From: Heterodontus francisci
Lineage: Eukaryota
Reading direction: 5' to 3'
DNA length: 64,000 nt
Assembly: GCF_036365525.1 (NCBI RefSeq)
Contig: NC_090419.1
Span: 13,206,001 to 13,270,000, forward strand
The position numbers and the translations under genes are program-made. Under the pieces are notes generated by a model that made no database searches, was not told the origin of the DNA, and was given only the letters and a program-made list of their open reading frames with translations. Position 1 is the first letter of the stretch; the number at the start of each line of letters is the position of its first letter. Below are positions 15,665-42,595 of the stretch, one piece after another.

Positions 15665-15869
15665 TGTTAGATACAGAGTAAAGCTCCCTCTACACTGTCC
15701 CCATCAAACACTCCCAGGACAGGTACAGCACGGGGGTTAGATACAGAGTAAAGCTCCCTCTACACTGTCCCCATCAAACACTCCCAGGACAGGTACAGCA
15801 CAGGGGTTAGATACAGAGTAAAGCTCCCTCTACACTGTCCCCATCAAACACTCCCAGGACAGGTACAGC
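15665..15869 (-). repeat. 70-bp tandem repeat, ~3 units, ending exactly at the Tx1 5' junction
   Basis: ttag recurs at 15667, 15737 and 15807 (period 70). The last unit stops at ...GGTACAGC. Confidence 0.95.
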
Positions 15870-16632
15870 GCTGGGATTGGCTGGGCAATTTGGAGCACTT
15901 CCTGCCAGCAATCAGGGGGAGCAGCTGCACCTGTGCTGCAGCAACTGCAGAGTGGAGTGTGGAGAGTGGAGAGTGGAGAGTGGAGAGTGCAGCAACTGGT
16001 GAGAGGAGAGTGGAATAACTGCAAAGAGGTGACTATAGAGTGGAGACAGCTGCATTTACTGAGGAACTGTTGCACTTTTTCAACGATTAAGAAGACCTGC
16101 AAGTCATTTTGGAGAGGTGGGTGTTGGAGCACCAGAGAACTGTTGGTTGTTTGGACTGTTGGGGGAGGGAGGAGGCACCGGAAGATCCAGGGGTGGGGCT
16201 GCCAAATTCTATAGGGAGCCCTTGTATTTGGTCTTGTGTTTATCTGCCATCCTGCACAGAAGGGGCTCCCTCCCCACCCCCAACTGTGTGGCTCGGGATG
16301 GCTGGAGCTGCCCGGCTGAAGACTATCTTAATACAACAACAGAAAAGGGAGAGAACCGGGCGGCTCTAGCCGACCCGGGCGAAGAGCCCTCCCCTAACTG
16401 GAAGATTGAATTGTAGACTCTGCAGGAAGGTGCTCCAACCACCAAGTGAACTGTAACATCCTCGCAGCTGTTCTCTCTCTTCCATCACTCGGCCACCTAT
16501 CCTCTCCTCTCCTTGTCCTTTTCAACCCTATCCTCCTCTACTCCCATCCCCACCTCCCCCATCATATTGTTTGTGTTTAAGAAAACTGTCGTGTGCTTTG
16601 TTTCTTGGGGGTGGGCGTAGCTCTGCGACCCC

Positions 16633-18674
16633 ATGGCAAGCCCCTCTTCGCCGGTGGCGGGGCCTTCCCGTTCATATGCTGCTGCGGCTGCTGCAGCTGC
16701 ACCTGTTGCCCCGTCACCGTTTGCTTTATTAACATCGAAGCATGGGGTCAAGAGCTACGTCCACCCGAACATGACTATCGAGGCATGCGTGAAAGCAATG
16801 GCCGAGGTTGTTGGCCCTTCGGCCATTGTTGCAGCCTCTAAAATGTATGGGAAGGCAGTGTTGTTCCTGAGGACCGAGCGGGCGGTGTCCCTGGCTCTGA
16901 GCAAGGGGCTCACCGTGGGCGGGACCTTTCTGCCAGTGGACCCCCTGGAGGCCACTGCGCAAAGGCTCATTCTATCCAATGTCCCGCCCTTCATTCCTGG
17001 TGAGCTCCTCCTTCCCCACCTGCACCATCTGGGGGAGGTAAAGACGGGGCTCACCCCAGTCCCGCTCGGTCTTCGGGAGAACAGCATCCGACACGTGTAC
17101 TCCTTCCGCCGCCAGTTATTCATGCAGCTGGCGCGGGAGGAGGTGACAGAGGGCCACTTTAATGTAGAATTCCAGGGGACGGCCTACCGCGTCTTCTGGA
17201 CCTTGGACGGGGTGCGGTGCCATGTCTGTAAGGGGGTGGGGGCATGTTCGTAAGAACTGCCCCAACCTCCCGGCTGCCAACTCCAACTCGGTGGCCCAGG
17301 GTGGCGACGCTGCATCTCCTCCCACCCCCCCCACACCTCCACCAGATACCATTCAGTCGGTACCGGAGGCTGTGGTTTTCACGGCCTCCGGCAGGGAGGG
17401 GGGTGACCGTCCAAGTGGAAGGAAGGCGCGGAGGAGAAATAAACATCGAGAGGCGCGTCCCCTGGACACCGTGACACTACCCGAGCCTGAGCTCAGCCCA
17501 AGGCCCGATCTCGGGAAGTCAACTTGCCCCAGGGCTGGGCTCAGGCCCAGGGTGAATAAAAAAAAGGAGAGTGTGGAGGTGGAGGCCTCTGATGATATGG
17601 AGGTCTCTGAGCCTCCACACACAACTGGGAAAAAGAGGAGAAGGCACCCCTCCACAGAGGTAACAAGGGGCCCTGAGGCTCAGGGCCCATCTGTTGGAGG
17701 GGAGCTGTCTCCTGTTTCGGGTCCCCAGGTTTCCCCTACCGCCACCACCAAGGCTGCAAAGTCCGGGCAGGAGCACTCTATTCCTCAGGATGGAGGGGAG
17801 GGGAAGGCCCCGGTACTTGAGGCCCCTCCTGAAGGAGTAAGTGGGGCCCTGCTTGTGGTGGGGAAGCCTGGGGACGCCGCCCATTCTACCACTGCTACTG
17901 GGTCGGGTGCCCTGAATGAAGGGGAGGGCGAGGCCCCAGAGGGTCGGCCCTCCCAGCCGGAGTCTACCACCAACCGAGAGACACCCGACCCGGTTATAAC
18001 CGAGAATGCTGCCCCATCTGCTGGGCCTGTGGGTGCTGCCGGAGCGGGAGATGGCCTCCTCTCTCCGCCTCCAGTCTCGGCTCCGGCTGGTTTTCCGGAG
18101 TCGGGAACTTCTGTCTCCCCTGGACCACTCATTGGCTTGGGGACGGAGGTGGAGGGGGGGTCCTGAACCGCTGGTGCCTACAGGCTCCAGTTTCACAATA
18201 GAACCCAGAGAGGACTCCTCCGCCATCGATCCTGGGGGTGGGATCGTGACGGAGGCGGGACCAGCTGGCGCGGCCGGGACGTCCGCCCCACAGTGTGTGG
18301 TAGATGCGTCGGCCGCTGGCGGTGACGACCCGGAGGAGGATGGGGATTCGGTGCGGGGCACGGAGGATGATCTTGATTCCATCACCAGTGAGGTGGTGGA
18401 GTCCCTCGTGCCTCCCACCGAATCTCCTCTCATCCCCACGGCGGAACTCCGGGATTTCCTCGCGGCTTGCAGAGGTTGCCGCAATAAAGTTCAGCTGGCC
18501 CTCGACCGTTGGTCGAATCTGGCGCTGATCATACAGTCCGTCCGTGCCGCCCTTCAGATAGCGGGCAAGCGCGCGGACGTGAAACTGGTTGAGAGGCGCC
18601 GTTTTAATGTGTTCCTCAATGGGTTGCTGGGGGAATGGAGGGCCAGGTGCACTTCCACTCCCTCCTCACAGTGA
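16633..18674 (+). CDS. Tx1 ORF1 (gag-like nucleic-acid-binding protein), split by two +1 frameshifts in G runs
   Basis: ORFs 16633-17253, 17222-18166 and 18006-18674 lie in successive frames. Removing one G near 17240 restores the CX2CX4HX4C knuckle CHVCKGVGHVRKNC. Confidence 0.8.
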
Positions 18675-18706
18675 GGTGTTTGTGACGGGTTTTAATTACC
18701 TTTGAC

Positions 18707-21700
18707 ATGAAGATAACCATAGCCAGCCTCAACATCAACGGCAGCAGAGGGGCTCACCGCAGATTTCACAATCTCTCAGTCCTTAGGGAAGGGAGATACG
18801 CGATGAGCTTTCTGCAGGAAACCCACACCGTTCCGGGAGACGAAGCCACCTGGCTCCTGGAGTGGCAGGGTGGGGTCTACATGAGTCACCTCACCCCTAT
18901 TTCCAGTGGGGTGGCTATCTTGTTGGCCCCGACTTTTCAGCCGGAGATCTTGGGGGTCAAGGGGCTAGTGCCGGGCCGCTTGCTCCACCTCACCGTTCGC
19001 CTGGGTAGCGTGCCGCTCCACTTTGTGAACGTGTACGCGCCCAGGCCCGGCGCGTTGCAAGCGCGCTTCTTTGAAGAAGTGTCCGCTCTCTTGAGCTCCA
19101 TCGATAGCGGCGAGTGCATCATCCTCGGGGGGGATTTTAACTGCACCCTCGAGGTGGGGGATCGCTCCGGTCCCCAGCGCGGCCAAGCGTCGGTGGAGAA
19201 GTTGAGGGGACTGATCAGCTCCCTTAACTTGGTGGACGTCTGGCGGAATCTCCATCCCGACTCCAGCGCCTTCACGTGGAGGTCTGGAGGAGGGGGGTCG
19301 CGAATCGACCGCCTCTACATTTCGCAGGCGTACGTCTCCCGCGTTTCGGCGGCCTCCATGCGGCTGGTGCCGTGCTCGGACCACCGCCTGGTGTGGGCGG
19401 AGTTCACTCCGCTCCGCACGCGGGCGGGGTCCGCGTACTGGCACTTTAACAACCGGCTGCTGGAGGACGTGCGATTTCGGGACTCGTTCTGTCGATTCTG
19501 GGCCGACTGGAGAAGGAAACAGGGGGGCTTCCCCTCCTTGAGGCTATGGTGGGATGTGGGCAAGACTCACATCCGCGTCTTCTGTCAGGAGTACGCGAGG
19601 GGGTCGACCAAGAGGCGGGAAGCCGAGATCGGGCGCCTTGAGAGGGAGGTGCTCGACTTGGAATCCCGCCTCGGTCATGCCGTCGCGGACCCGGTCCTGT
19701 GGCAGGCGTACAAAGAGAAGAAGGGCGCGCTGAGGAACCTGCAGCTCATAGGGTCCCGAGGCGCGTACGTGAGGTCGCGGATCCAGATCCTGGAAGATTT
19801 GGACCGTGCCTCACCCTTCTTCTACTCGCTGGAAAAATGGCGGGGGGTCCGTAAGCAGCTCGTTGAGCTGCTGGCCGACGACGGATCCTCCATCACGGAT
19901 CCGGAGGGAATGGGCCTCCTGGTCCGGACGTATTACAGTGCGTTGTTCTCTCCGGATCCGTCCAGCGAGGATGCGCGCAGAGTTTTGTGGGAGGACCTGC
20001 CGCAGGTCAGCCCGGAGGGCGCCGAAGGATTGGAGGCTCCGCTCACGTTGGCGGAGCTGACTGGCGCCCTCCACCAGCTCTCGAGGGGCAAATCCCCAGG
20101 GCTGGATGGGTTGACCGTGGAGTTCCTCAGGGCGTTCTGGGACGTCCTGGGGGACGATTACGCGCGGGTCCTGGGGGAAAGCCTAGCGACCGGGGAGATG
20201 CCCCTCTCGTGGCGCAGGGCGGTCATCGTCCTGCTGCCGAAGAGGGGCGATCTCCGCCTGCTTAAAAACTGGCGTCCGGTCTCCCTCCTCAGCACGGATT
20301 ATAAGATCTTTGCCCGGGCTATGTCTACCCGCCTGGGCTCCATGCTGGCCCACATGATCCACCCCGACCAGTCCTACACGGTCCCGGGCCGGTCCATCCA
20401 GGACAACATCCACCTGGTCCGGGACCTGATCCATCTTTCCCAGAGGACTGGTCAGTCGGTCGCCTTTCTCTCCCTCGATCAGGAGAAGGCGTTCGACAGG
20501 GTGGATCACGATTACCTTTTCGGGACTCTGCGCGCTTTCGGACTCGGGCCGCATTTCGTGGCCCGGGTCCGACTTTTAGACGCCGCCGCAGAGTGTCTAG
20601 TCAAAGTTAACGGGTCCTTGACGGCGCCCCTTCGCTTTGGGAGAGGAGTGCGTCAGGGGTGCCCCATGTCCGGCCAATTGTATACCATCTGCGTGGAGCC
20701 CTTCCTGTGCCTGCTTCGCAGGAGGTTGACGGGGTTGGCTCTGCGCGAGCCGGCCATGCGGGTCGTCCTCTCGGCTTACGCCGACGACGTGCTCCTCGCA
20801 ATCACAGATCCCGTTGACTTGCGGAGGATGCGCGACTGCCAGCAGACCTTTTCTGCCGCGTCCTCCGCGAGGATCAATTGGGAGAAATGTTCCGGACTCC
20901 TGGTTGGTCAGTGGCGGGTGGACTCCCTGCCGGAGGAGATGACACCTTTTGCGTGGAGCACCACGCACCTCCTCTATCTGGGAGTCCACCTTAGCCCCGC
21001 TGAGGAAGCCTGGCCGGCAAACTGGCAGGAGTTGGAGGCGAAAGTCACCGCTCGGCTGGGGCGCTGGACAGGACTGCTCCGAGTGCTTTCCTACAGGGGC
21101 CGAGCATTGGTCATAAACCAACTGGTGGCCTCCATGCTGTGGTACCGGTTGGTCACTTTGGCCCCGCCCCCTGTATTTGCCACCAAGATCCAGAAGAAAC
21201 TCGTCGATTTCTTCTGGGGCAAGAGGAAACACTGGGTCTCTGCCGCGGTCCTGAGTCTCCCGATCGAGGAGGGCGGTCAGTCGCTGGTGTGCGTCCGCAC
21301 CCAGGCTGCGACTCTCCGCCTTCGGACCCTGCAGAGATACCTGTACGTCGAGCGTCCTCCCAGATGGTGTGCGCTGGCGACGTATTTTTTCCGCCAGTGT
21401 CACTGCCTTCAAGACGACACGCAGCTCCCGGTGGAGTCCGTTAGCCGCGCCTCTCTGAGGGAGTTGCCTGTCTTTTACCGGGATCTTTTCCGAGTCTGGA
21501 ACATGGTCGCCTCCAGTCAGGGCGCTCCCCCGCCGGCGGAGGAGAGCGCCTCGGCTGTCCGGGCGGCCGACTCCGGGGACGGTCCGGCGGGCGGAGGAGT
21601 AGCCGGAACCCCCGGGACGCCCCTCACTGCGGGTGGCGAGGGGGCTCGGGAGTGCGGAGCGATCCCGGCCGAGCTGACCCCCGCTCGGCCGGAACTGCTC

Positions 21701-22486
21701 ATCGGACCCAGGCCCCGAAACCCTCCTCGGGAGCCGGTCCCGCACAACCCGAGCCGCCTCTCGGAAATGCCCTCCGTGCCATTCCAATCGGCGCGGAGGG
21801 GTTTCCTGTACTGGCTGCTCCTGCACACTCTCCACTTCCTCGCCCTCGTCAGCCGGCCGGACACGCCCTGGCGGTCCGCGTTGCCATCTGGCGGCGAGGG
21901 GAAACCCCGATGGAGGTCTCTCTACGCGGGAGTCTTCCCCCTTTACATCGGGGAACTGGGGTGGAGGGTGCTGCACAGAGCAGTCCCGTGCAATAGGCTT
22001 TTAAGTAGGTTCACGGACTCCCAGGCCAGCTGTACTTTCTGCGGCCTGGACGAGTCCGTGTTCCACATTTATATGGAGTGTGCGAGGTTGCAGCCCCTAT
22101 TTGAGTATCTGAAGGGGCTGCTCCTCAAATTCTGGCTGCACTTCAGTCCCACGCTCCTGATCTTTGGGCACCCGGTGCGGAGGGGCTTGGGCCGGGAGGA
22201 GGATCTCCTCGTCGGTCTGCTCCTGGGCCTGGCCAAGGTGGCAATTCACAGGTCCAGTTTGCGGGCCGTCGGGGGGTCCGTCCTCCCCGATTGCCTGCCC
22301 CTCTTCCGCGGTTACGTTCGCGCCCGGGTGTCCCTGGAAAGGGAGCATGCGGTGTCCGCCGGTACGCTTGAGGCCTTCCGCGACTGGTGGGCACCGCAGG
22401 GACTGGAGTGCATTGTCGACGCCGAGAATGGCATTTTTAATTTGAGTTTTTTGTTTATTTATCTGGTTTTAATAAAGTTATTTTAA
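18707..22486 (+). CDS. Tx1 ORF2: AP endonuclease, reverse transcriptase and C-terminal Zn finger (1259 aa)
   Basis: APE motifs SLNING, LQETH, GGDFN, SRIDR, SDH; RT motifs KSPGLDG, WRPVSLL, DQEKAFD, GVRQGCP, YADD; Zn finger CTFC...ESVFHIYMEC. Confidence 0.95.
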   Translation: MKITIASLNINGSRGAHRRFHNLSVLREGRYAMSFLQETHTVPGDEATWLLEWQGGVYMSHLTPISSGVAILLAPTFQPEILGVKGLVPGRLLHLTVRLGSVPLHFVNVYAPRPGALQARFFEEVSALLSSIDSGECIILGGDFNCTLEVGDRSGPQRGQASVEKLRGLISSLNLVDVWRNLHPDSSAFTWRSGGGGSRIDRLYISQAYVSRVSAASMRLVPCSDHRLVWAEFTPLRTRAGSAYWHFNNRLLEDVRFRDSFCRFWADWRRKQGGFPSLRLWWDVGKTHIRVFCQEYARGSTKRREAEIGRLEREVLDLESRLGHAVADPVLWQAYKEKKGALRNLQLIGSRGAYVRSRIQILEDLDRASPFFYSLEKWRGVRKQLVELLADDGSSITDPEGMGLLVRTYYSALFSPDPSSEDARRVLWEDLPQVSPEGAEGLEAPLTLAELTGALHQLSRGKSPGLDGLTVEFLRAFWDVLGDDYARVLGESLATGEMPLSWRRAVIVLLPKRGDLRLLKNWRPVSLLSTDYKIFARAMSTRLGSMLAHMIHPDQSYTVPGRSIQDNIHLVRDLIHLSQRTGQSVAFLSLDQEKAFDRVDHDYLFGTLRAFGLGPHFVARVRLLDAAAECLVKVNGSLTAPLRFGRGVRQGCPMSGQLYTICVEPFLCLLRRRLTGLALREPAMRVVLSAYADDVLLAITDPVDLRRMRDCQQTFSAASSARINWEKCSGLLVGQWRVDSLPEEMTPFAWSTTHLLYLGVHLSPAEEAWPANWQELEAKVTARLGRWTGLLRVLSYRGRALVINQLVASMLWYRLVTLAPPPVFATKIQKKLVDFFWGKRKHWVSAAVLSLPIEEGGQSLVCVRTQAATLRLRTLQRYLYVERPPRWCALATYFFRQCHCLQDDTQLPVESVSRASLRELPVFYRDLFRVWNMVASSQGAPPPAEESASAVRAADSGDGPAGGGVAGTPGTPLTAGGEGARECGAIPAELTPARPELLIGPRPRNPPREPVPHNPSRLSEMPSVPFQSARRGFLYWLLLHTLHFLALVSRPDTPWRSALPSGGEGKPRWRSLYAGVFPLYIGELGWRVLHRAVPCNRLLSRFTDSQASCTFCGLDESVFHIYMECARLQPLFEYLKGLLLKFWLHFSPTLLIFGHPVRRGLGREEDLLVGLLLGLAKVAIHRSSLRAVGGSVLPDCLPLFRGYVRARVSLEREHAVSAGTLEAFRDWWAPQGLECIVDAENGIFNLSFLFIYLVLIKLF

Positions 22487-22769
22487 AAATATAAGTGTGT
22501 ATATAAAGGGGGCCTGAGGAATAAAGGCCCCCTCGACATAAAAAAAATATATAAAAGGGGCCTGGGGTATAAAGGTCACCTTAAAAAAGAAAAAAAAAAA
22601 TGGGTTTTCTGGCCATCTTTTGGAAAAAAGCCAGAACCCCAAATCTGACTGAAGTTGGGAAACGGCTGTTTCTGATGTCAGCAGCTGTCAGTTGGGAGAG
22701 TGACTTGCGATCTTGTAAAAAAAAGATTGACCAACCATCTACTGAGCATTCCCGCTCACTGCAATCATC

Positions 22770-30041: not shown

Positions 30042-30989
30042 GTCAGTGTTGATGTCGAGTTGAGAATCACAAGCGTTTGTTCAGGTTCAGGATGCTTGGC
30101 ATGGGTTTGCCAGTCTCCGAGTGTGGCTGCCAACAACATGTGGGAGGTGCCCTTTCTTGGCTTCAATGGACTGGCAGGGCTTAAAATCATGGTCCCGCTG
30201 TTGGCGGGATCTTGCTGTGCGGGAGGCGGCTGCCCATCCGCCTGCGCGCGGCCAGCTTCAGAGCGAGCGGCCGGGCGTGCAAGCGTTCCGGGAGCGTCTC
30301 CCGGCAGACCCGACCCGGCTTTCACGCAAAGCCACGCCCCCCCCCCCCACCCCCCGCGACCCTGCCCTGCCGGGAAGGACCTGCGCGAAATCTGCGGGTT
30401 ACGCTTTGTAGCAGAAAGATTTGAAACTCTGCTTCGCACAGGAAATTGAGGGCTTTTGTTGTTGCAGATTCAGGAGCAGTCGCGAGCGAAAGCGAGCAGA
30501 AATATCCAAACGATCCGCTGTTTGCAGACGGTCTCTCCCCAAGATGTGTTCAATGACAACATGTGCAGTGGCACAATTCAAACCCTCTTTGCTTTGATTT
30601 CTTCCTTCTGGGATGGAGGGGCTTGGCCTCAGTGTATGTGCCTAAACTCTGTGTTGTCGAGCTCTCCTAATCTCTTTCATAGGAGTTGTCAACCTGCCAC
30701 GCTTCCTGCCTCTGACCTAAATTAAGTTCTGCAGTTGCAACACACGAGTGCAGGGAGAGTCGGTGAGGGAAACTGCAATCATGTTGTAACTACAACGTGC
30801 GCAGCAACGCACGGTCTGCTGAATCCGCGTTCCGCCATTTCAAAGGAGCAGGAAAATGGGGATCAGACAGTCATTCCCAATTCTGGGATCTTCCAGGGCA
30901 CACTTGTTTCGGGATGTGAGTCTCCCCTCTGCTGATTGTTGGCCGTGTGGTGCAAAAGCTGCCATTTAGATGAGGGGGATATCAGGATG

Positions 30990-31767
30990 GCTGTACCTGT
31001 CCCGGGGAGTGTTTGATGGGGGACAGTGTAGAGGGAGCTTTACTCTGTATCTAACCCCCGGGCTGTACCTGTCCCGGGAGTGTTTGATGGGGACAGTGTA
31101 TAGGGAGCTTTACTCTGTATCTAACCCCCGTGCTGTACCTGTCCCGGGAGTGTTTGATGGGGACAGTGTAGAGGGAGCTTTACTCTGTATCTGACCCCCG
31201 TGCTGTACCTGTCCTGGGGAGTGTTTGATGGGGGACAGTGTATAGGGAGCTTTACTCTGTATCTAACCCCCGTGCTGTACCTGTCCCGGGAGTGTTTGAT
31301 GGGGGACAGTGTAGAGGGAGATTTACTCTGTATCTGACCCCCGTGCTGTACCTGTCCCGGGAGTGTTTGATGGGGACAGTGTATCGGGAGCTTTATTCTG
31401 TATCTGACCCCCGTGCTGTACCTGTCCTGGGGAGTGTTTGATGGGGGACAGTGTATAGGGAGCTTTACTCTGTATCTAACCCCCGTGCTGTACCTGTCCC
31501 GGGAGTGTTTGATGGGGGACAGTGTAGAGGGAGATTTACTCTGTATCTGACCCCCGTGCTGTACCTGTCCCGGGAGTGTTTGATGGGGACAGTGTAGAGG
31601 GAGCTTTACTCTGTATCTGACCCCCGTGCTGTACCTGTCCCGGGAGTGTTTGATGGGGACAGTGTATCGGGAGCTTTATTCTGTATCTGACCCCCGTGCT
31701 GTACCTGTCCCGGGAGTGTTTGATGGGGGACAGTGTATCGGGAGCTTTATTCTGTATCTAACCCCCG
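30990..31767 (+). repeat. 70-bp tandem repeat, ~11 units, ending at a Tx1 poly(A) junction
   Basis: Same unit as 11435-11725. Confidence 0.95.
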
Positions 31768-32662
31768 TTTTTTTTTATATAAGGTGGCCTTTATACCTCA
31801 GGCCCCTTTTATATATTTTATGTCGAGGGGGCCTTTATTCCTCAGGCCCCCTTTATACACATATTTTTAAAATAACTTTATTAAAAACAGATAAATAAAC
31901 CTAAAACTCAAATTAAAATGCCATTCTCGGCGTCGACGATGCACTCCAGTCCCCGCGGTCACGGAAGGCCTCAGGCGTACCGGCGGACACCGCATGCTCC
32001 TTCTCCAGGGACACCCGAGCGCGAACGTAACCGCGGAAGAGGGGCAGGCAATCAGGGAGGACGGACCCCCCACCCCCCCACTGACGGCCCGCAGCCTGGA
32101 CCTGTGAATTGCCACCTTGGCCAGGCCCAGGAGCAGACCGACGAGGAGATCCTCCTCCCGGCCCACGCCCCTCCGCACCGGGTGCCCAAAGATCAGGAGC
32201 GTGGGGCTGAAGTGCAGCCAGAATTTGAGGAGCAGCCCCTTCAAATACTCAAACAGGAGCTGCAATCTCGCACACTCCGTACAAATGTGGAACACGGACT
32301 CGTCCAGGCCGCAGAAAGTACAGGCGGCCGGGGAGTCCGTGAACCTACTTAAAAGTCTATTGCACGGGACTGCCCTGTGCAGCACCCTCCACCCCAGGTC
32401 CCCGATGTAAAGGGGGAGGACACCCGCGTAGAGAGAGACCTCCATCGGGGTTTCCCCTCGCCGCCAGATGGCAACGCGGACCGCCAGGGCGTGTCCGGCC
32501 GGCTGACGAGGGCGAGGAAGCGGGGAGTGTGCAGGAGCAGCCCGTACAGGAAACCCCTTGCGTGCCGGAGGGCTTTTCCGAGAGGCGCCTCGGGTTGTGC
32601 GGGACCGGCTCCCGAAGAGGGTTGCGGGGGCTTGGGTCCGATGAGCAGTTCTGGCCGAGCGG
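31768..32662 (-). mobile_element. 5'-truncated Tx1 copy
   Basis: Near-identical to 21680-22600 (IGDLGWRVLHRAVPCNRLLSRF...), with the same 3' UTR and poly(A). Confidence 0.92.
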
Positions 32663-33047
32663 TTGTCATTCATGCATTAATCTTTCTGAAAGTTGCTCAC
32701 CAGCACCCTCTGTAGGACCAAATTTGTAATGTGGCCCCTCACTGAAAATGTTGGACGCCCCTCGTGCAGAATGAGCTTTACTCTGTATCGAATCTAATCT
32801 GGTTGCCCAACCTGAAACCCGACAACATGGGTTTGGGTCGGGTCAGGACTGTACCGTTTCGTTTCGTACTGTTTTTGTTTTAATCTACGATTTTTTTCCT
32901 GTTGCATTAATATGTTCGTTATTTTTGGGTCGAGTTGGGCATTTAAAAAAATTAAAGGACACGAGAATGGGTAGGTTCTTGTCGGGTCGCGTTTTAATTT
33001 TATACCCAAGCCAGGCTTTAATCGAAACTCTGTTTTTTTTTTACCAT

Positions 33048-33126
33048 ATGCTGTACCTGCCCTGGGCGTGTTTGATGGAGACAGTGTAGAGGGAGCTTTA
33101 CTCTGTATCTAACCCCCATGCTGTAC
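33048..33126 (+). repeat. Single 70-bp repeat unit abutting the 32-bp array
   Basis: gctgtacctgccctgggcgtgtttgatggagacagtgtagagggagctttactctgtatctaacccccatgctgtac. Confidence 0.85.
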
Positions 33127-33129
33127 GCG

Positions 33130-35585
33130 TATTCACAGGGCGTCCCTGGGGAGTCTGTCAGTATTTACAGGGGTCCCCGGGGAGTGTGTCAGTATTTACA
33201 GGGGTCCCCGGGGAGTGTGTCAGTATTTACAGTGGATCCCCGGGGGAGTGTGTCAGTATTTACAGGGGATCCCCGGGGGAGTGTGTCAGTATTTACAGGG
33301 GGTCCCCGGGGGAGTGTGTCAGTATTTACAGGGGTCCCCGGGGGAGTGTGTCAGTATTTACAGGGGTCCCCGGGGAGTGTGTCAGTATTTACAGTGGATC
33401 CCCGGGGGAGTGTGTCAGTATTTACAGGGGGTCCCCGGGGGAGTGTGTCAGTATTTACAGGGGGTCCCCGGGGAGTGCGTCAGTATTTACAGGGGGTCCC
33501 CGGGGAGTGCGTCAGTATTTACAGGGGTCCCCGGGGGAGTGTGTCAGTATTTACAGGGGGTCCCCGGGGGAGTGTGTCAGTATTTACAGGGGGTCCCCGG
33601 GGGAGTGTGTCAGTATTTACAGGGGGTCCCCGGGGAGTGTGTCAGTATTTACAGTGGATCCCCGGGGGAGTGTGTCAGTATTTACAGGGGGTCCCCGGGG
33701 GAGTGTGTCAGTATTTACAGGGGGTCCCCGGGGAGTGTGTCAGTATTTACAGGGGGTCCCCGGGGGAGTGTGTCAGTATTTACAGGGGGTCCCCGGGGGA
33801 GTGTGTCAGTATTTACAGGGGTCCCCAGGGGACTGTGTCAGTATTTACAGGGGGACCCCGGGGGAGTGTGTCAGTATTCACAGGGGGTCCCCGGGGGAGT
33901 GTGTCAGTATTTACAGGGGGTCCCCGGGGGAGTGTGTCAGTATTCACAGGGGGTCCCCGGGGGAGTGTGTCAGTATTTACAGGGGTCCCCAGGGGACTGT
34001 GTCAGTATTTACAGGGGGACCCCGGGGGAGTGTGTCAGTATTCACAGGGGGTCCCCGGGGGAGTGTGTCAGTATTTACAGGGGGTCCCCGGGGGAGTGTG
34101 TCAGTATTCACAGGGGGTCCCCGGGGGAGTGTGTCAGTATTTACAGGGGTCCCCAGGGGACTGTGTCAGTATTTACAGGGGGACCCCGGGGGAGTGTGTC
34201 AGTATTTACAGGGGGTCCCCGGGGGAGTGTGTCAGTATTTACAGGGAATCCCCGGGAAGTGTGTCAGTATTTACAGGGGTCCCTAGGGGACTGTGTCAGT
34301 ATTTACAGGGGGACCCCGGGGGAGTGTGTCAGTATTCACAGGGGGTCCCCGGGGGAGTGTGTCAGTATTTACAGGGGGGGGGGGGGCCCGGGAAGTGTGT
34401 CAGTATTTACAGGGAATCCCCGGGGAGTGTGTCAGTATTTACAGGGCGGTTCCCGGGGGAGTGTGTCAGTATTTACAGGGAATCCCCGGGAAGTGTGTCA
34501 GTATTTACAGGGGGACCCCAGGGGACTGTGTCAGTATTTACAGGGGGACCCCGGGGGAGTGTGTCAGTATTCACAGGGGGTCCCCGGGGGAGTGTGTCAG
34601 TATTTACAGGGGGGGGGGGGGGGCCCGGGGAGTGTGTCAGTATTTACAGGGAATCCCCGGGGAGTGTGTCAGTATTTACAGGGCGGTTCCCGGGGGAGTG
34701 TGTCAGTATTTACAGGGAATTCCCGGGGAATGTGTCAGTATTTACAGGGGGGTTCCTGGGGGAGTGTGTCAGTATTTACAGGGAATCCCCGGGGAGTGTG
34801 TCAGTATTTACAGGGGTCCCCGGGGAGTGTGTCAGTATTTACAGGGGTCCCCGGGGGAGTGTGTCAGTATTTACAGTGGGGGAGCCCGGGGAGTGTGTCA
34901 GTATTTACAGGGGGGTTCCTGGGGGAGTGTGTCAGTATTTACAGGGAATCCCCGGGGAGTGTGTCAGTATTTACAGGGGTCCCCGGGGAGTGTGTCAGTA
35001 TTTACAGGGGATCCCCAGGGGAGTGTGTCAGTATTTACAGGGAATCCCCGGGGGAGTGTGTCAGTATTTACAGGGGATCCCCGGGGGAGTGTGTCAGTAT
35101 TTACAGGGGATCCCCGGGGGAGTGTGTCAGTATTTACAGGGGATCCCCGGGGAGTGTGTCAGTATTTACAGGGGGTCCCCAGGGGAGTGTGTCAGTATGT
35201 ACAGGGGGTCCCCAGGGGAGTGTGTCAGTATTTACAGGGGGTCCCCGGGTAGCGTGTCAGTATTTACAGGGGACCCCGGGGGAGTGTGTCAGTATTTACA
35301 GGGGGACCCCGGGGGAGTGTGTCAGTATTTCCAGGGAATCCCCGGAGAGTGTGTCAGTATTTACAGGGGGTCCCCAGGGGAGTGTGTCAGTATTTAGAGG
35401 GGGTCCCCGGGGAGTGTGTCAGTATTTACAGGGGGGTTCCCGGGGGAGTGTGTCAGTATTTACAGGGAATCCCCGGGGAGTGTGTCAGTATTTACAGGGG
35501 GGTTCCTGGGGGAGTGTGTCAGTATTTACAGGGGGGTTCCCGGGGGAGTATGTCAGTATTTACAGGGAATCCCCGGGGGAGTGTC
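33130..35585 (+). repeat. ~31-33-bp minisatellite in the last SIT1 intron
   Basis: Unit gggagtgtgtcagtatttacagggggtccccgg with variable G-run lengths. Confidence 0.97.
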
Positions 35586-35614
35586 TGGATTTCTCACGCT
35601 CTCTGTCTCCGCAG

Positions 35615-35932: not shown

Positions 35933-36357
35933 TGAGACCTTCGGCGATGCTGCATCGGGGGACAGCATTAGTTGCTTTACCCTGAAACTCTCAATCCCGA
36001 GGACCTCTCCCTCTCTCCATTTTCGAATCAATATTTCTGAACTGATGGACTAATGACACAATTCCAATGACCCACAGCCCTGCAGGCTGGCGGGTTCCCC
36101 AACCGTGAATCTGGATGCTTGGGAACAATTGCAGAACGGACCTGGACCACAGTTTTTTGGATAACTGTTCCGCACGCCGGGTCCCTCAGCAGCTCATTCA
36201 GGGATAAATCTGGACGCAGATGGTCGTCGATGACAGGAGATCGATCCCGTTGGCGATTGAGATACACTCTTTCATTCTGTCTCTCCCTTTCTCATTCCCA
36301 AGGCCAAATTCTCATCTCCCTTAGCTTTTAAGCGTCTCTTTCTGCAGACAAGATTCA

Positions 36358-37380
36358 GGGTATTCACAGGATGTCTCCGGGGAGTGTGTCAGTATTTACA
36401 GGGGGATTGTGTCAGTATTTCCAGGGGGTCCTGGGGAGTGTGTCAGTATTTACAGGGGGTCCCCGGGGACTGTGTCAGTATTTACAGGGGGTTCCCGGGG
36501 ACTGTGTCAGTATTTACAGGGGCTCCCCGGGGACTGTGTCAGCATTTCCAGGGGGTCCTGGGGAGTGTGTCAGTATTTACAGGGGGTCCCCGGAGACTGT
36601 GTCAGTATTTACAGGGGCTCCCCGGGGAGTGTGTCAGTATTTCCAGGGGGTCCTGGGGAGTGTGTCAGTATTTACAGGGGGTCCTGGGGAGTGTGTCAGT
36701 ATTTACAGGGGTTCCCCGGGGAGTGTGTCAGTATTTAGAGGGGTTCCCCGGGGACTGTGTCAGTATTTACAGGGGGTCCTGGGGACTGTGTCAGTATTTA
36801 CAGGGGGTCCCCGGGGACTGTGTCAGTATTTACAGGGGGTCCCCGGGGACTGTCAGCATTTCCAGGGGGTCCTGGGGAGTGTGTCAGTATTTACAGGATG
36901 TCTCTGGGGTCTGTGTCAGTATTTACAGGGGGTCCCCGGGGACTGTGTCAGCATTTCCAGGGGGTCCTGGGGGGTGTGTCAGTATTTACAGGGGGTCCCC
37001 GGGGAGTGTGTCAGTATTTACAGGGGGTCCCCGGGGAGTGTGTCAGTATTTACAGGGGGTCCCCGGGGACTGTGTCAGTATTTACAGGGGCTCCCCGGGG
37101 ACTGTGTCAGCATTTCCAGGGGGTCCTGGGGAGTGTGTCAGTATTTACAGGGGATCCTGGGGAGTGTGTCAGTGTTGATAGTGGATCTCAGGGTATGTGT
37201 CAGTATTTACAGGGGGTCCCCGGAGACTGTGTCAGTATTTACAGGGGCTCCCCGGGGAGTGTGTCAGTATTTACAGGGGGTCCTGGGGAGTGTGTCAGTA
37301 TTTACAGGGGTTCCCCGGGGAGTGTGTCAGTATTTAGAGGGGTTCCCCGGGGACTGTGTCAGTATTTACAGAGGGTCCCT
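36358..37380 (+). repeat. Second ~31-bp minisatellite array downstream of the SIT1 stop
   Basis: Same unit family with gactgt and ttccag variants. Confidence 0.97.
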
Positions 37381-37734
37381 GTCGATATTTACATGCCTGT
37401 GTTGGGTGCTAAAATGTCCCTGTTTCAACTCACTGAGATAATACAATCACTGCCTGAGATTAACAGCCTTTGGCACCACAAAGTGCCCAGGTAGATCGAA
37501 TAATCGGGGAACACTACATAAAGTGAACACACTCCGGGGGCAAACCTGAACTTCACAAATGTAGTCCAGGTTCCTCCCTGAGAGAGACAGGGCACCTGCT
37601 GCTCCAGGTACGCTGTAAAGAGATTTAACAAAAAGACAATCGGCAGATAAACGGCTTGAAATAAACATAATGGCAAAATAAAATGGTAAAAATTTAGTTT
37701 TCAAAAGTGACGAAAGATACACTTTCAATCACAG

Positions 37735-38185
37735 AATCGCACAGGCATAGGCCATTCGGCCTCTCGTGCCTGTGCTGGCTCTTTGAACGAGCTATCTAAT
37801 TAATCCCACATCCCTGCAAATTTTCCCCCTTCCAGTATTTCTCCAATTCCCCTTTTGAAAGTTACTATTGAATCTGCTTCCACCGCCCTTTCAGGCAGCG
37901 CGTTCCAGATCACAACAACTCACTGCGTCGAAAACATTCCCATCTCCCCCTCTGGTTCTTTTCCCGATTGCCTTAAATCTGTGTCCCTCTGGTTACCGAC
38001 CCTCCTGCCAGTGGGAACAGTTTCTCCTCATTTACTCCATCAAAACCCCTAATGATTTTGAACGCCTCGATTAAATCTCCCCTTAACCTTCTCTGCTCGA
38101 AGGAGAACAATCCCAGTTTCTCCCGGTCTCTCCACGTTAACTGAAGTCCCTCATCCCTGGGACCACTCTCAGAAATCTCCTGTGC
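37735..38185 (-). mobile_element. CR1-type LINE 3' fragment
   Basis: Highly similar to 12750-13130. Confidence 0.8.
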
Positions 38186-38824
38186 ATCCTCACCCGCGGG
38201 ATACAGTACTGAGGGAGTGCTGCACTGTCAGTGGTGCTATCTTTCGGAAGACATTAAACCGATGGGTTCACCCGCTGCATAACCAACATTTGTTAACATT
38301 TAATTGGCTGCCCCAGTGCCTTTCCCCAGTTCAGGAGGTTGCAAAGCGCCTCCCAGGCAACGCAGTCCTTTATTTTTGAAGTGTGGTCACTGTTGTAACG
38401 TAGGGAGTGCGGCAGCCGATTTGTGCACAGCAAGATCCCACGGGCCGCGTGATAATGACCCAGATCATCTGTTTTTTGGGGGGGCTTTGGTTGCGGGATA
38501 AATATTGGGTCCCTCTCTCTGGCAAGGACATAACCTGAGAAAATAGACTTCTTGTTGCTGCGTTCCTTATTGTATGTGTGTTTTTTAAGTCATAGTTTAA
38601 AGGTGGCAGTAGACTTTGCCAGTTGGGCACTGCCTTCCCTCCCTCCGGAACCTGGGTCCAGCGATGGGGTGAATGCTTCCGTTGCCACTGACCATATAAG
38701 TACTCCACCTGGGCAACCTCATCCCTATTCCGAGTGACTTCACACGGTTTTACTCTGTATCTAACCCCCGTTTTGTTTTCATGGGGACAGTTCAGAGCGA
38801 GCTTTACTCTGTATCCAACCCCGA

Positions 38825-41100
38825 TTTTTTTTATATATTATATATAAGGTGACCTTTATACCCCAGGCTCCTTTTATTGTGGATGAGGGGGCCTTTATTC
38901 CCCAGGCCCTCTTTATATACATTTTAAATAAATAACTTTATTAAACACAGATAAATAAACCAAAAACTCAAATTAAAATGCCATTCTTGGCGTCGACGAT
39001 GCACTCCAGCCCCCGCGGTGCCCACCGGTCGTAGAAGGTCTCAAGTGTACCGGCGGACACCGCATGCTCCTTCTCCAGGGACACCCGGGTGTGAACGTAA
39101 CCTCGGAAGAGGGGCAGGCAATCAAGGAGGACGGACCCCCCCCCCCCCCCCGAATGGCCCGCAGCCTGGACCTGTGAATTGCCACCTTGGCCAGGCCCAG
39201 GAGCAGACCGACGAGGAGATCTTCCTCCCGGCCCAAGCCCCTCCGCACCGTGTGCCCAAAGATCAGGAGCGTGGGGCTGAAGTGCAGCCAGAACTTGAGG
39301 AGCAGCCCCTTTAAATACTCGAACAGGGGCTGCAACCTCGCACACTCCGTATAAACATGGAATACGGACTTGTCCAGGCCGCAGAAAGTACAGGCGGCCT
39401 GGGAGTCCGTGAAACGACTTCCAAGACTATTGCATGGGACTGCCCTGTGCAACGCCCTCCACCCCAGGTCTCCGATGTAAAGGGGGAGGACTCCCGCGTT
39501 GAGAGACCTCCACCGTGGTTCCCCTCGCCGCCAGATGGCAACACGGTCTGCCATGGCGTGTCCAGCCGGCTGATGAGGGCAAGGAAGTGGAGAGTGTGCA
39601 GGAGCAGCCCATACAGGAACCCCTCCGCACCATGTGGAATGGCACGGAGGACATTTCCCAGAGGTGGCACAGCTTGTGCGGTTCCGGCTCCCAAGGAGGG
39701 TTTCAGCGCCTGGGTCCGATAAGCAGTTCCGGCCGAGCGGGGGCTAGCATAGCCAGCAGCGCTCCCGGGCACCCTCGTCACTCACAGTGAGGGGCGTCTC
39801 GGGGGCTTCGGCTACTCCTCTGCCCGTCGGTCCGTTCCCGGAGTCGGCCGCTCTCCTCCGCCAGCGGGGGAGCGCCCTGACTGGAGGCGACCATGTTCCA
39901 GACTCGGAATAGATCCTGGTAAAGGACAGGCAACACCCTCAGAGAGGCGCGGCTAACGGACTCCACCGGGAGCTGCGTGTCGTCTTGAAGGCAATGCCCC
40001 TGGCGGAAAAAAATGTCACCAGCGCACACCATCTGGGAGGATGCTCGACGTACAGGTATCTCTGCAGGGTCCGAAGGCGGAGAGTCGCAGCCTGGGTGCA
40101 GACGCACACCAGCGACTGGCCGCCCTCCTCGATCGGGAGACTCAGGACCGTAGCAGAGACCCAGTGTTTCCTCTTGCCCAGAAGAAATCGATGAGTTTCT
40201 TCTGGATCTTGGTGGCAAATACAGGGGGCGGGGCCAAAGTGACCAACCAGTACCACAGCATGGAGGCCACCGGTTGGTTTATGACCAGCGCTTGGCCTCT
40301 GTAAGAAAGCACTCGGAGCAGTCCTGTCCAACGCCCTAGCTGTGATGGAGGATCTGTCGTCGGCCAGCAGCTCAACGAGCCGCTTACGGACCCCCCGCCA
40401 TTTTTCCAGCGAGTAGAAGGGTGAGGCGTGGTCTAAATCTTCCAGGATCTGGATCCGCGACCTCACATGCGCACCTCGGGACCCTATGAGCTGCAAGTCC
40501 CTCAGCGCGCCCTTCTTCTCTTTATACGCCTGCCACAAGGCCGGGTCCGCGATGGCATGACTGAGGCGGGACTCCCAAGTCGAGCACCTCCCTTTCTAAG
40601 AGCCCGATCTCGGCCTCCCGCCTCTTGGTCAACCTCTTCGCGTACTCCTGACAGAAGACATGGATGTGAGTCTTGCCCACATCCCACCATAGCCTCAAGG
40701 AGGGGAAGCCCCCCCTGCTTCCTTCTCCAGTCAGCCCAGAATCGATGGAACAAGTCCCGGAAACGATCAATTCCCTCAACTTCTCCACTGACGCTTAGTC
40801 GCGCTGGGGACCGGAGAGATTCCGCCCCCCCCCCCCCACCCACCCACCACCGCCCCAAGGTGCAATCGCCGCTATAGACAGAGCTCAAGAGAGCGTCAGG
40901 CTGTTGGGAGGGTGGACCCTCACAGGTCTCGCCCCCCCCACCCAGGACACCCGACCCATCGGCCAAAGGAATGATTTCTCCCGTGTGGTCCACAGGCGCT
41001 CCCATCATGGGCGGGTCCCGGTCCTCGTGAGTTCCCAAAGCTACAGGGGCATCTCTCCCTCCTCCATACCGAGGGTCCCTGCCCAGGGCTTTCAGCCCTC
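38825..41100 (-). mobile_element. Internally deleted, more diverged Tx1 copy flanked by 70-bp repeat pieces
   Basis: ORF2 pieces (RFWADWRRKQGG, GSRGAHVRSRIQILEDLD, KFWLHFSPTLL, DAKNGILI*). Repeat fragments lie at 38748-38823 and 41103-41147. Confidence 0.88.
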
Positions 41101-42595
41101 ATGAGTGTGTTTGATGGGGACAGTGTAGAGGGAGCTTTACTCTGTATTTTATAGCGGGTGCCTGCGTGGATTAAGCAACGGGTTCTCTCAACTGAATGCG
41201 TGGAAAATTCAGACAAACAGATTGAAGTTAGTCAACAGTTCCAGTTCGAACAGTGACTGTATATGTGTGCGCTTTATTACTGCAACATACTGCGTCCAGC
41301 CCTATCAAGGAGTAAGAATTTAACTTTTAATAAAATGTCAAGTAAAATAAGTTAAAAAATGTATTTATTTTTCATGCTCTATAATTCACCCCACCTGGTC
41401 AGCGGGTCATGGGGAAGCCCACTCCTCTAATTTCATTATGGAGGGGCGCAGGGAGATGGAGGTTCCTTTCCGGGACGGGTTTGAGTGGAGTTGGAATGAC
41501 AAGATTTCTGAGGCTTTCGTCACTGAATCTTGTTAACACGTACTGATTTTATTTTTGACGAGAGACAGGCAAACAAGAGGCACTGAGATCCGGTGCCGTG
41601 TGTTGCACAACATCCTTAATTGCCTTGTGTCTGTCGAGCTGTTATCCGATATTTGTGGATCTACCTGTCCAATCAGCTTCAGTATTTCTGCATTTAACCC
41701 CCACATTGCCGCAAGCATTTTTTCAAAAATGGAAGAGAAATTTCAGACAGGTTTAGCGATGAGGAGATATTGGACAGGGCTGGGATTGTTATCCTTGGAA
41801 CAGAGGTGGCTGAGGGGAGATTTAATTGAGGGGTATAGAGGCAGAAAGCCTCATCGCATTTAAAACACACATGGAATGGGCATCTGAAGTGCCCTAACCT
41901 ACGGGGCCACGGACCAAGAGCTGGAAAGTGGGATACAGCTGGATAGTATTTTTTTTTGTCCCCCGAATGGCCTCCGTCTGCGCTGTAAATGTTCGGTTTC
42001 GATTATCGCGCCACCGGCTGGCCAGATCACGCAACTGCACCGTCACGGGCAACTGTTTACATGTTTTTATATGCTTTACAGTTCCGGGTTGCTCGAGCAA
42101 AGAGCTGGCGCAGACGTGGCGGGGCCGAATGGCCTCCTCCCTTCTCATGTCGATGGCTCGGCCTCTCACCAGCCCAGCAGTTCTTGCGAAACAAATGACT
42201 CGAGTGCCTGGGCGAGATGCTGGAGGACAGAATATCAAAAAAAAAAAAACAGGATGATAACGGTGAGCATCTTCACGGTGGGGCTTACAGTCCGGTGACT
42301 CCACCTTTCCTTGCTGCCAGCAGTGGCTCATTCATCACAGCAGAGATTGGAACTTTGGCTATCTAATTCAATGACGTTGGACATCCCCTCCCCACGTGCC
42401 CAGACTTCCCCCCACAATGCTCCCCAACTGGTACCTGTGCCAGCGGAGGCTTTAAAGTCGAGTTAGCTCCCAGGCCAGGGCACACTCTGCTGCTGAGCCT
42501 GTCCGACATCTCCGGAATGACAGGAGACCCGAAATGGTCGCTCGACCAGAAGCCACAGGCTTGAAGCGATCTTAAATGAGGAAACATGTACAGCT

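What the first reader, a model, noticed from the sequence alone, without database searches (positions are those of the whole stretch)
15665..41147. Candidate new target-specific Tx1 retrotransposon homing to one site in a 70-bp tandem repeat
On the element strand the repeat unit reads ...CAGGTACAGC^ACGGGGGTTAGATACAGAGTAAAG.... The full-length copy's 5' end begins right after GGTACAGC (15869/15870). Copy 2's poly(A) runs directly into CGGGGGTTAGATACAGA (31767/31768). Copy 3's poly(A) runs into TCGGGGTTGGATACAGAGTAAAG (38824/38825), with more repeat at its other end (41103-41147). All three share the site (within 1-2 nt) and the orientation, despite different strands and ages. Known Tx1 targets are snRNA, tRNA and 5S genes, microsatellites and transposons; I know of no report of this repeat as a target. 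Inference: a sequence-specific APE uses a dispersed minisatellite as a safe harbour and may spread it by 3' transduction. Caveat: the full-length copy has no repeat on its 3' side.
Basis: partly seen in the sequence, partly recalled or inferred. Interest (0 to 1): 0.88.

Follow-up and report, generated by a model that had tools for sequence, protein, structure and literature searches.

The report
Shark Tx1 element targeting a 70-bp repeat
A jumping gene of the frog-Tx1 type has inserted three separate times at the same nucleotide of a 70-bp repeat in this cartilaginous-fish genome, which is the known site-specific habit of this group applied to a target I could not find described.

Summary
A full-length poly(A) LINE lies at 15870-22600 (+), with an intact 1259-aa APE+RT ORF2. 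Two 5'-truncated copies lie at 31768-32662 and 38825-40820 (both -). All three abut a 70-bp repeat in one orientation and at one position of the unit (GGTACAGC^ACGGGGGTTAG). ORF2 is 49% identical over 98% of its length to Xenopus Tx1 and falls inside the Tx1L lineage in a tree.

The two truncated copies are independent events: each has many private differences, its own truncation point and its own tail, and each has repeat on both sides. The repeat also occurs free of any element. Chance, segmental duplication and "the repeat is part of the element" are therefore all unlikely.

Contigs of a public run of the same organism show the repeat running, at this position, into long T-runs in 29 contigs. 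A true genome-wide flank table could not be made.

One exception stands: the full-length copy has no repeat on its 3' side, the side where insertion starts. There is no evidence for 3' transduction.

Tx1-clade elements are known to be target-specific, and satellites are already listed among their targets, so this is a new member of a known kind. The scan has flagged the same thing in nine other notes on other pieces of this genome.

The parts
15666..15869 (+). 2.9 units of the 70-bp target repeat directly 5' of the full-length element. The array starts at unit position 8 (GTTAGATAC) and ends exactly at ...GGTACAGC.
   Evidence: (TRF: period 70, 2.9 copies, 99% matches).
15870..22600 (+). Full-length Tx1-clade non-LTR retrotransposon (6731 bp), made of 5' UTR, ORF1 region, ORF2, 3' UTR and an A-rich tail.
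15870..16632 (+). Presumed 5' UTR, with an (AGAGTGG)n microsatellite at 15949-16014. The 5' end is defined only by the end of the repeat, because the window holds no second full-length copy.
16633..18674 (+). ORF1 region, split over three overlapping frames (16633-17253, 17222-18166, 18006-18674). The first change of frame lies inside a CCHC zinc-knuckle motif (CHVCKGVG / HVRKNCP), so ORF1 is broken in this copy as assembled.
   Evidence: No Pfam hit at E<=0.01.
18707..22486 (+). Intact ORF2, 1259 aa, with an APE-type endonuclease at residues 6-226 and a reverse transcriptase at residues 511-762.
   Evidence: PF03372 at 2e-15, PF00078 at 5e-38. (49% identity over 98% of its length to Xenopus Tx1 149-kDa protein, 1332 bits). 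(human L1 ORF2p only 263 bits). (tree).
22487..22600 (+). 3' UTR with two GC-rich hairpins, each with an AAUAAA-containing loop (a 48-bp duplication), followed by the tail A6GA11. The flank from 22601 (TGGGTTTTCTGGCC) is not the repeat.
   Evidence: z = -3.6; hairpins kept in all three copies, no covariation.
30990..31767 (-). 11-unit array of the target repeat directly 3' of copy 2. On the element strand it starts at CGGGGGTTAG and ends exactly at ...GGTACAGC|CATCCTG.
31768..32662 (-). Copy 2: a 5'-truncated Tx1 copy (element positions 5812-6727) with a tail of 9 A. It is 94.6% identical to the full-length copy over the shared core, with 27 private differences and a private 10-bp deletion.
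   Evidence: (the 10 bp are present in contigs of other runs).
32663..33126 (-). 5' side of copy 2. It holds 101 bp of unrelated sequence (32663-32763), a repeat remnant at unit positions 12-28 (32764-32789), a 259-bp unrelated insert (32790-33048), and one full unit (33049-33126) that ends at ...GGTACAGC.
38740..38824 (-). Decayed repeat (about 1.2 units) directly 3' of copy 3. It reads T|CGGGGTTGGATACAG..., then CATGAAAAC-AAAA-CGGGGGTTAGATACAGAGTAAAA.
38825..41102 (-). Copy 3: an older, 5'-truncated and internally deleted Tx1 copy with a tail of 8 A. Positions 38825-40820 align to the full-length copy (89.4% over the shared core, 69 private differences). Positions 40821-41102 align only in short patches.
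41103..41147 (-). Repeat on the 5' side of copy 3 (unit positions about 14-52, ...CATCAAACAC|). About 18 bp of the unit are missing between the two flanks.
11436..11724 (-). Unoccupied 4.1-unit array of the same repeat, with no Tx1 sequence beside it. A tRNA-like SINE head follows at about 11750.
   Evidence: (no ORF2 match nearby).

Best explanation
This is a family of Tx1-clade (L1-superfamily) non-LTR retrotransposons that inserts sequence-specifically into a dispersed 70-bp minisatellite of a cartilaginous fish.

Shown here: the anatomy of the element, its kinship to Tx1, the shared site, and the independence of the copies.

Inferred mechanism, by analogy with Tx1L and other APE-type site-specific LINEs:
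1. The APE endonuclease of ORF2 recognises the unit and nicks the bottom strand at 5'-...TATCTAACCCCCG(T)^-3'. On the element strand this is between GGTACAGC and ACGGGGG.
2. The freed 3' end primes reverse transcription on the poly(A) tail (target-primed reverse transcription).
3. The top strand is cut at or upstream of the same position. This leaves no target duplication: the full-length 5' junction is flush, and the truncated copies have target deletions of about 18 and 42 bp.

The RNA ends in plain poly(A), so at most one nucleotide of the primer can pair with it. The specificity must therefore lie in protein-DNA recognition. The abundant repeat acts as a harmless landing site.
For: Kinship:
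- ORF2 has an APE domain followed by an RT domain.
- It is 49% identical over 98% of its length to the Xenopus Tx1 149-kDa protein (1332 bits), against 263 bits to human L1 ORF2p.
- In a quick ML tree it is sister to a stingray sequence, then sturgeon, then Xenopus Tx1, inside a clade with 100% SH-aLRT support that is separate from the teleost relatives.

Site:
- Three junctions fall at one nucleotide and in one orientation: full-length 5' end, copy 2 3' end, copy 3 3' end.

Independence of the copies:
- Copies 2 and 3 are 88.5% identical to each other, less than either is to the full-length copy.
- They carry 27 and 69 private differences, different truncation points and different tails.
- Both have repeat on both sides in a consistent register, as expected for insertion into an existing array.

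The repeat is independent of the element:
- An array stands without any element.
- In contigs of another organism (X6) the repeat and uninterrupted unit-to-unit joints are very abundant, while this 3' UTR is almost absent.

Beyond the window:
- In run X1 (organism A, the best holder of the stretch), 29 contigs read the repeat up to ...CTAACCCCCG and then run into T-runs longer than copy 2's.
- Nine other first-stage notes and one follow-up on other pieces of this genome describe the same thing. These are leads only.
Against: - The full-length copy has unique sequence, not the repeat, on its 3' side (22601 onward). That is the junction that target-primed reverse transcription creates first.
- Only three copies could be examined directly.
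- The contig data cannot give the fraction of copies that sit in the repeat, and contigs drop rare flanks.
- The 5' end of the element rests on a single copy.
- No nicking activity was tested.
Confidence: 0.8

Rival explanations
1. The 70-bp units are part of the element or of its transcript, as 5' monomers or co-transcribed upstream sequence. On this reading the junctions reflect composite or head-to-tail structures rather than recognition of a target.
For: - The full-length copy has units only on its 5' side, and they are 99% alike. Its 3' flank is unique.
- Two further repeat boundaries end exactly at GGTACAGC|.
Against: - The arrays behind the tails of copies 2 and 3 are not followed by any element body. 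The sequences behind those boundaries do not match the full-length copy.
- An array stands alone at 11436-11724.
- Both truncated copies are bracketed by repeat on both sides.
- The repeat is abundant in a run that lacks this 3' UTR.
- A poly(A) that abuts the unit at one nucleotide still needs a site-specific event.
Confidence: 0.07
2. The copies and their repeat flanks arose by segmental duplication of one ancestral insertion, so the shared junction counts only once.
For: - Copies 2 and 3 lie 7 kb apart on the same strand.
- They share 19 positions that differ from the full-length copy.
Against: - They differ in truncation point: element position 5812 for copy 2, against at least 3292 for copy 3.
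- They differ in tail (TATA9 against TATATAATATATA8), in flank length (11 units against 1.2) and in the sequence beyond the flank.
- They carry 27 and 69 private differences, and a 10-bp deletion is private to copy 2.
- The full-length copy is on the other strand and supplies the other junction.
- The 19 shared positions fit an older subfamily.
Confidence: 0.04
3. There is no real sequence specificity. The element prefers A/T-poor satellite or open chromatin, the repeat is very abundant, and the common register is coincidence.
For: - The repeat is very abundant in the contigs and occurs seven times in 64 kb.
- One of three 3' junctions is outside the repeat.
Against: - The same nucleotide and the same orientation occur three times.
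- At 2.3% repeat cover, the chance is about 1.7e-4 per junction.
Confidence: 0.03

Closest known systems
Tx1L of Xenopus laevis, inserted in the Tx1D DNA transposon
   Same: - Closest named relative of ORF2 (49% identity, full length).
- APE+RT ORF2, an ORF1 upstream and a poly(A) tail.
- Insertion in a fixed orientation into another repetitive element rather than a gene. Kojima 2015, PMC4494074, states that Tx1 is inserted into Tx1D.
- From my memory only: the site is a fixed one in a tandem internal repeat (PTR-1) of Tx1D, and its endonuclease was shown to nick the target specifically (Christensen et al. 2000).
   Different: - The target here is a 70-bp unit found in short dispersed arrays with unrelated flanks.
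- I could not show that it lies inside a DNA transposon.
- The host is a cartilaginous fish.
Tx1 families listed with satellites ('Sat') as target in Kojima 2015 (PMC4494074, Fig. 3 legend)
   Same: Tx1-clade elements whose target class is a satellite.
   Different: The figure itself is not held, so I could not see which families or which satellites are meant. No cartilaginous-fish family is mentioned in the text that I read.
Kibi and Koshi ((TC)n and (TTC)n), and the crocodilian Tx1 families in (TTCC)n/(TTTC)n
   Same: Tx1-clade elements that use a tandem repeat as landing site.
   Different: - Those targets are microsatellites of 2-4 bp, where no single position is defined.
- Here one bond in a 70-bp unit is used.
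- In the tree the window's ORF2 sits with Tx1L, not with the unnamed teleost relatives. Whether those include Kibi or Koshi is not known.
Keno (U2 snRNA), Mutsu (5S rRNA), Dewa (tRNA), and the crocodilian Tx1-Mar families (Mariner-N4_AMi)
   Same: Tx1-clade elements with one fixed site in a multicopy sequence.
   Different: The target here matches no Rfam RNA family, and I did not recognise it as a transposon.
R1, R2 and TRAS/SART site-specific LINEs of arthropods
   Same: The same logic: a multicopy tandem target serves as a safe landing site, and the 3' junction is precise.
   Different: - They belong to different clades. R2 uses a restriction-like endonuclease.
- Their targets are rDNA or telomeric repeats.

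Membership tests
Tx1 clade of non-LTR retrotransposons (L1 superfamily) | ORF2 with an N-terminal APE-type endonuclease followed by a reverse transcriptase | tested here: met
   PF03372 at residues 6-226 (2e-15) and PF00078 at residues 511-762 (5e-38), in an uninterrupted 1259-aa ORF.
Tx1 clade of non-LTR retrotransposons (L1 superfamily) | The RT/ORF2 sequence groups with Tx1L rather than with L1 or other clades | tested here: met
   - 1332 bits and 49% identity over 98% of its length to YTX2_XENLA.
- 263 bits to human L1 ORF2p and 85 bits to R2.
- inside a 100%-supported clade with Xenopus Tx1, sturgeon, stingray and turtle sequences.
- Limit: this was a quick tree, and no labelled Keno, Kibi or L1 references were included.
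Tx1 clade of non-LTR retrotransposons (L1 superfamily) | An ORF1 upstream of ORF2 (about 80 kDa in Tx1L) | tested here: inconclusive
   about 680 codons of coding-like sequence lie upstream, with a CCHC knuckle, but split over three frames. No Pfam hit. Homology to Tx1 ORF1 was not tested, because the pieces are too short for the length filter of the protein search.
Tx1 clade of non-LTR retrotransposons (L1 superfamily) | A poly(A) 3' end | tested here: met
   tails of 9 A, 8 A and A6GA11.
Target-specific Tx1 families | Independent copies at the same nucleotide of the target and in the same orientation | tested here: met
   three junctions from three independent copies. The exception is the 3' junction of the full-length copy.
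Target-specific Tx1 families | Most copies in the genome sit in the target | tested here: inconclusive
   - 29 contigs of run X1 show the repeat running into a long T-run at this bond, but contigs give no proportion.
- The metagenome scans were blank.
Target-specific Tx1 families | The endonuclease nicks the target at the insertion bond in vitro | not testable with these tools
   This needs the recombinant APE domain and a 70-mer duplex.
Named families Keno / Mutsu / Dewa (small-RNA-gene targets) | The target is a U2, 5S or tRNA gene | tested here: not met
   the repeat matches no Rfam family, even at E<=1.
Named families Kibi / Koshi (microsatellite targets) | The target is a 2-4 bp microsatellite | tested here: not met
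   the unit is 69-70 bp.
LINEs with tandem 5' monomers (mouse L1 type), considered as a rival | The tandem units occur only as the 5' part of elements | tested here: not met
   arrays occur without an element, and arrays lie behind poly(A) tails with no element body after them.

The most novel reading that the evidence does not exclude
The element may carry and seed its own target. The full-length copy has three near-identical units on its 5' side only, a unique 3' flank and no target duplication. It could be an off-target insertion of a transcript that began in the upstream array (5' transduction). Such events would plant new short arrays around the genome, which would explain why the 70-bp repeat is dispersed in small arrays with unrelated flanks. 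Frequent cutting at the same bond would also explain why two other arrays in this window end exactly at GGTACAGC| without any Tx1 behind them.
Probability: 0.15. Interest if true: 0.6.

Novelty: new member of a known kind. Interest (0 to 1): 0.4.

Why it matters
Site-specific LINEs show how a mobile element can multiply without harming its host. Their endonucleases are also models for how an APE fold reads a long DNA sequence.

This element offers a Tx1L-lineage member with an intact ORF2 and a well-defined 70-bp target, which makes a convenient pair for nicking assays. It also documents a change of target within one vertically inherited lineage (ray, shark, sturgeon, frog, turtle).

For annotating this genome, the finding explains a frequent pattern: Tx1 fragments embedded in 70-bp arrays, including within the MHC-linked region covered by this window. 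It does not change what is known about the kind of system.

Tried and rejected
- **Unbiased scan of JGI metagenome contigs:** a scan for a conserved 24-nt piece of the 3' UTR and a scan for a 36-nt core of the repeat both gave 0 matches. No shark DNA is held there.
- **Reads:** only Logan contigs were on offer. They show presence and some junctions but no proportions, and the table of bridging pieces was cut to a few rows.
- **Target duplication around [array + full-length element]:** none was found. The only shared words are A-runs.
- **The unexplained sequences next to repeat boundaries:** these are 30500-30989, 32790-33048, 32663-32763 and 40960-41102. None matches the full-length element or anything else in the window.
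- **Rfam:** no match for the repeat and none for the whole window, so the target is not a recognisable small-RNA gene.
- **3' UTR hairpins:** they are conserved but show no covariation, so they are not evidence of function.
- **Literature:** five full-text searches found no description of a cartilaginous-fish Tx1 family or of this repeat. Repbase and Dfam cannot be searched here.
rejected for this window, because the array behind copy 2 ends without a second tail.
Full report
**What is there**

The window has no N. Between 15666 and 41147 lie three copies of one LINE family and several patches of one 70-bp tandem repeat.

On the strand of the elements the unit reads ACGGGGGTTAGATACAGAGTAAAGCTCCCTCTACACTGTCCCCATCAAACACTCCCAGGACAGGTACAGC. 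BLAST of the unit finds seven patches:
- 11436-11724 (-)
- 15666-15869 (+)
- 30990-31765 (-)
- 32764-32789 (-)
- 33049-33126 (-)
- 38749-38822 (-)
- 41107-41147 (-)

**The full-length copy (15870-22600, +)**

- A 763-bp leader.
- An ORF1 region of about 680 codons, split over three frames. The first change of frame lies inside a CCHC zinc knuckle.
- An uninterrupted ORF2 of 1259 aa with an APE endonuclease and a reverse transcriptase.
- A 3' UTR with two conserved hairpins, and an A-rich tail.

**The two truncated copies**

BLAST against the full-length copy defines both.
- Copy 2 is 31768-32662 (-) and holds the last 0.9 kb of the element.
- Copy 3 is 38825-40820 (-) in three blocks with internal deletions. 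Only short patches align up to 41102.
- A protein-level search of the window with ORF2 finds no further copy.

**The observation**

- The full-length copy starts directly after ...CAGGTACAGC (15869/15870).
- The 9-A tail of copy 2 runs into CGGGGGTTAGATACAGA (31768/31767).
- The 8-A tail of copy 3 runs into T-CGGGGTTGGATACAGAGTAAAG (38825/38824).
- In each case the element has the same orientation relative to the repeat.

The first base of the unit after the break is A, so the two 3' junctions and the 5' junction define the same bond to within one nucleotide: GGTACAGC^ACGGGGG. The repeat covers 2.3% of the window. A given bond and orientation is therefore hit by chance about 1.7e-4 times per junction. 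Chance is excluded, and the real rivals are common descent of the junctions or the repeat being part of the element.

**Are the copies independent?**

Yes. Over the shared 3' core:

| Pair | Identity |
|---|---|
| Full-length vs copy 2 | 94.6% |
| Full-length vs copy 3 | 89.4% |
| Copy 2 vs copy 3 | 88.5% |

- Copy 2 has 27 private differences and copy 3 has 69. They share 19 positions against the full-length copy, which fits an older subfamily.
- A 10-bp deletion is private to copy 2. Contigs of other runs carry the 10 bp.
- The truncation points differ, and so do the tails, the number of units behind the tail (11 against 1.2) and the unique sequence beyond.
- The full-length copy is on the other strand.

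**Is the repeat part of the element?**

No.
- An array of 4.1 units at 11436-11724 has no Tx1 sequence beside it.
- The arrays behind the tails of copies 2 and 3 are not followed by an element body.
- Both truncated copies have repeat on both sides in a consistent register, as expected for insertion into an existing array.
  - For copy 3 the 5' flank ends at ...CATCAAACAC and the 3' flank starts at CGGGG, so about 18 bp of the unit are lost.
  - For copy 2 a remnant ending at ...GAGTAAAGCTC lies 101 bp upstream of the truncation point.
- In contigs of another organism (run X6) the repeat reaches very high summed depth and many contigs join unit to unit across the empty site. The last 140 nt of this element are nearly absent there.
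- The unit matches no Rfam family.

**What the element is**

- ORF2 is 49% identical over 98% of its length to the Xenopus laevis Tx1 149-kDa protein (1332 bits).
- It is 92% identical to part of a horn-shark (Heterodontus francisci) gene model and 74% identical to part of a stingray one.
- Human L1 ORF2p scores 263 bits and R2 proteins about 85 bits.
- In a quick maximum-likelihood tree of 24 sequences, the window's ORF2 is sister to the stingray sequence, then sturgeon, then Xenopus Tx1. The turtle copies complete a clade with 100% SH-aLRT support, apart from the teleost relatives.
- Limits of the tree: the careful search did not finish, the root is at the midpoint, and no labelled Keno, Kibi or L1 sequences were available.
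- The element is therefore a member of the Tx1 clade, in the lineage of Tx1L itself.

**Evidence beyond the window**

- Two scans of metagenome contigs were blank.
- The sequencing-run index found 19 runs from 9 studies that hold part of the element's 3' end. All are kept as Logan contigs.

I laid four runs on copy 2's junction (31625-32700).
- Run X1 (organism A, the best holder of the stretch): 11,480 contigs fit, so the family is highly repeated.
- Contigs cover the last bases of the element next to the junction.
- In 29 contigs the repeat, read up to ...CTAACCCCCG plus the 9 T of copy 2, goes on as a longer T-run. That is the same bond followed by longer poly(A) tails.
- One difference 30 nt inside the element lies 52 letters from a contig's end, so at least one contig should cross the junction.
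- Contigs cannot give the proportion of copies in the repeat, and they drop rare flanks. This is support, not the decisive table.

The scan's own notes list nine other first-stage findings and one follow-up (s1-872051) on other pieces of this genome that describe the same thing. I treat them as leads only.

**How it most likely works**

By analogy with Tx1L and other APE-type site-specific LINEs, the endonuclease recognises the unit and nicks the bottom strand after ...TATCTAACCCCCG(T). That 3' end primes reverse transcription on the poly(A) tail.

Top-strand cleavage at or upstream of the same bond leaves no target duplication. The full-length 5' junction is flush, and the truncated copies have target deletions.

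The RNA ends in plain poly(A), so RNA-target pairing can contribute at most one nucleotide. Specificity must therefore come from the protein. These steps are inferred, not shown.

**What does not fit**

- **The full-length copy's 3' flank.** It has unique sequence behind its tail (22601 onward), with no trace of the unit and no target duplication around [array + element]. The 3' junction is the one made first, so there are two possibilities. Either this was an off-target event of a transcript that started in an upstream array and carried 2.9 near-identical units with it, or a later deletion removed the 3' part of the array. An empty-site allele would decide between them.
- **Two further repeat boundaries at the same bond.** Both fall exactly at GGTACAGC| with no Tx1 behind them: the far end of the 11-unit array (30990), and the unit at 33049, which is followed by a 259-bp unrelated insert after which the unit resumes. 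With about ten such boundaries in the window, two at one nucleotide has a probability of roughly 0.01.
- **A possible tail-only insertion.** In copy 3's 3' flank the next unit boundary reads ...CATGAAAAC-AAAA-CGGGGG. It lacks the same 18 bp as copy 3's own 5' junction.

Together these hints would fit frequent cutting at this bond, but they are thin.

**Comparison with what is known**

- Target specificity is the known habit of the Tx1 clade. Tx1 inserts into the Tx1D DNA transposon, Keno into U2 genes, and Kibi and Koshi into microsatellites. Crocodilian families insert into Mariner, Harbinger and LTR elements (Kojima 2015, PMC4494074).
- The legend of that paper's Fig. 3 lists satellites among the target classes.
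- That the prototype's site lies in a tandem internal repeat of Tx1D is from my memory, not from a paper read here.
- I found no description of a cartilaginous-fish Tx1 family or of this repeat in five full-text searches. Repbase and Dfam could not be consulted.
- Nothing in the window supports 3' transduction.

**Verdict**

- The spreading mechanism is not supported, and the novelty was somewhat overstated.
- This is a new member of a known kind, of moderate interest.
- The scan had already found it on other DNA of the same genome.

Noticed in passing
window 30990 and 33049 (with 32790-33048): Two repeat boundaries end exactly at ...GGTACAGC|, the Tx1 insertion bond, but are followed by sequence unrelated to the element. 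One is followed by unique DNA. The other is followed by a 259-bp insert that starts ATATGGTA11CAGAG on the element strand, after which the unit resumes at GATACAGAG.
   Followed up: partly
window 38749-38800: In the decayed repeat behind copy 3, the next unit boundary reads CATGAAAAC-AAAA-CGGGGGTTAG. The same 18 bp or so of the unit are missing as at copy 3's 5' junction. This may be a tail-only aborted insertion.
   Followed up: partly
window 22500-22596, 31777-31866, 38842-38916: The 3' UTR ends in a 48-bp duplication that forms two GC-rich hairpins with AAUAAA in the loops (z = -3.6). The hairpins are kept in all three copies, without covariation.
   Followed up: partly
window 11750-11900: A tRNA-like SINE head (GGCGCAGTGG...GGGTTCAGTTCTGG), followed by the widespread fish/shark core GTGCGGAGTTTGCAAGTTCTCCCTGTGACTGCGTGGGTTTCC, lies directly next to the unoccupied 70-bp array. 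Rfam reports nothing at gathering score.
   Followed up: no
window 33129-35584 and 36402-37379; also 8367-8507 and 9604-9747: Large arrays of a 32-33-bp satellite (GTATTTACAGGGGGTCCCCGGGGGAGTGTGTCA) lie between copies 2 and 3. Short arrays of the same unit occur on the other strand near 8.4 and 9.7 kb.
   Followed up: no
window 53068-64000: An 11-kb array (160 copies, 84% matches) of a different 69-bp satellite runs to the end of the window.
   Followed up: no
runs X5-X9 and X16-X19: Runs labelled as at least five organisms other than the best holder carry 33-62% of the sampled 31-letter words of the element's last 1.7 kb. Near-identical copies therefore exist in several labelled species or samples. 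In run X6 the ORF2 part is abundant but the 3' UTR is not.
   Followed up: partly
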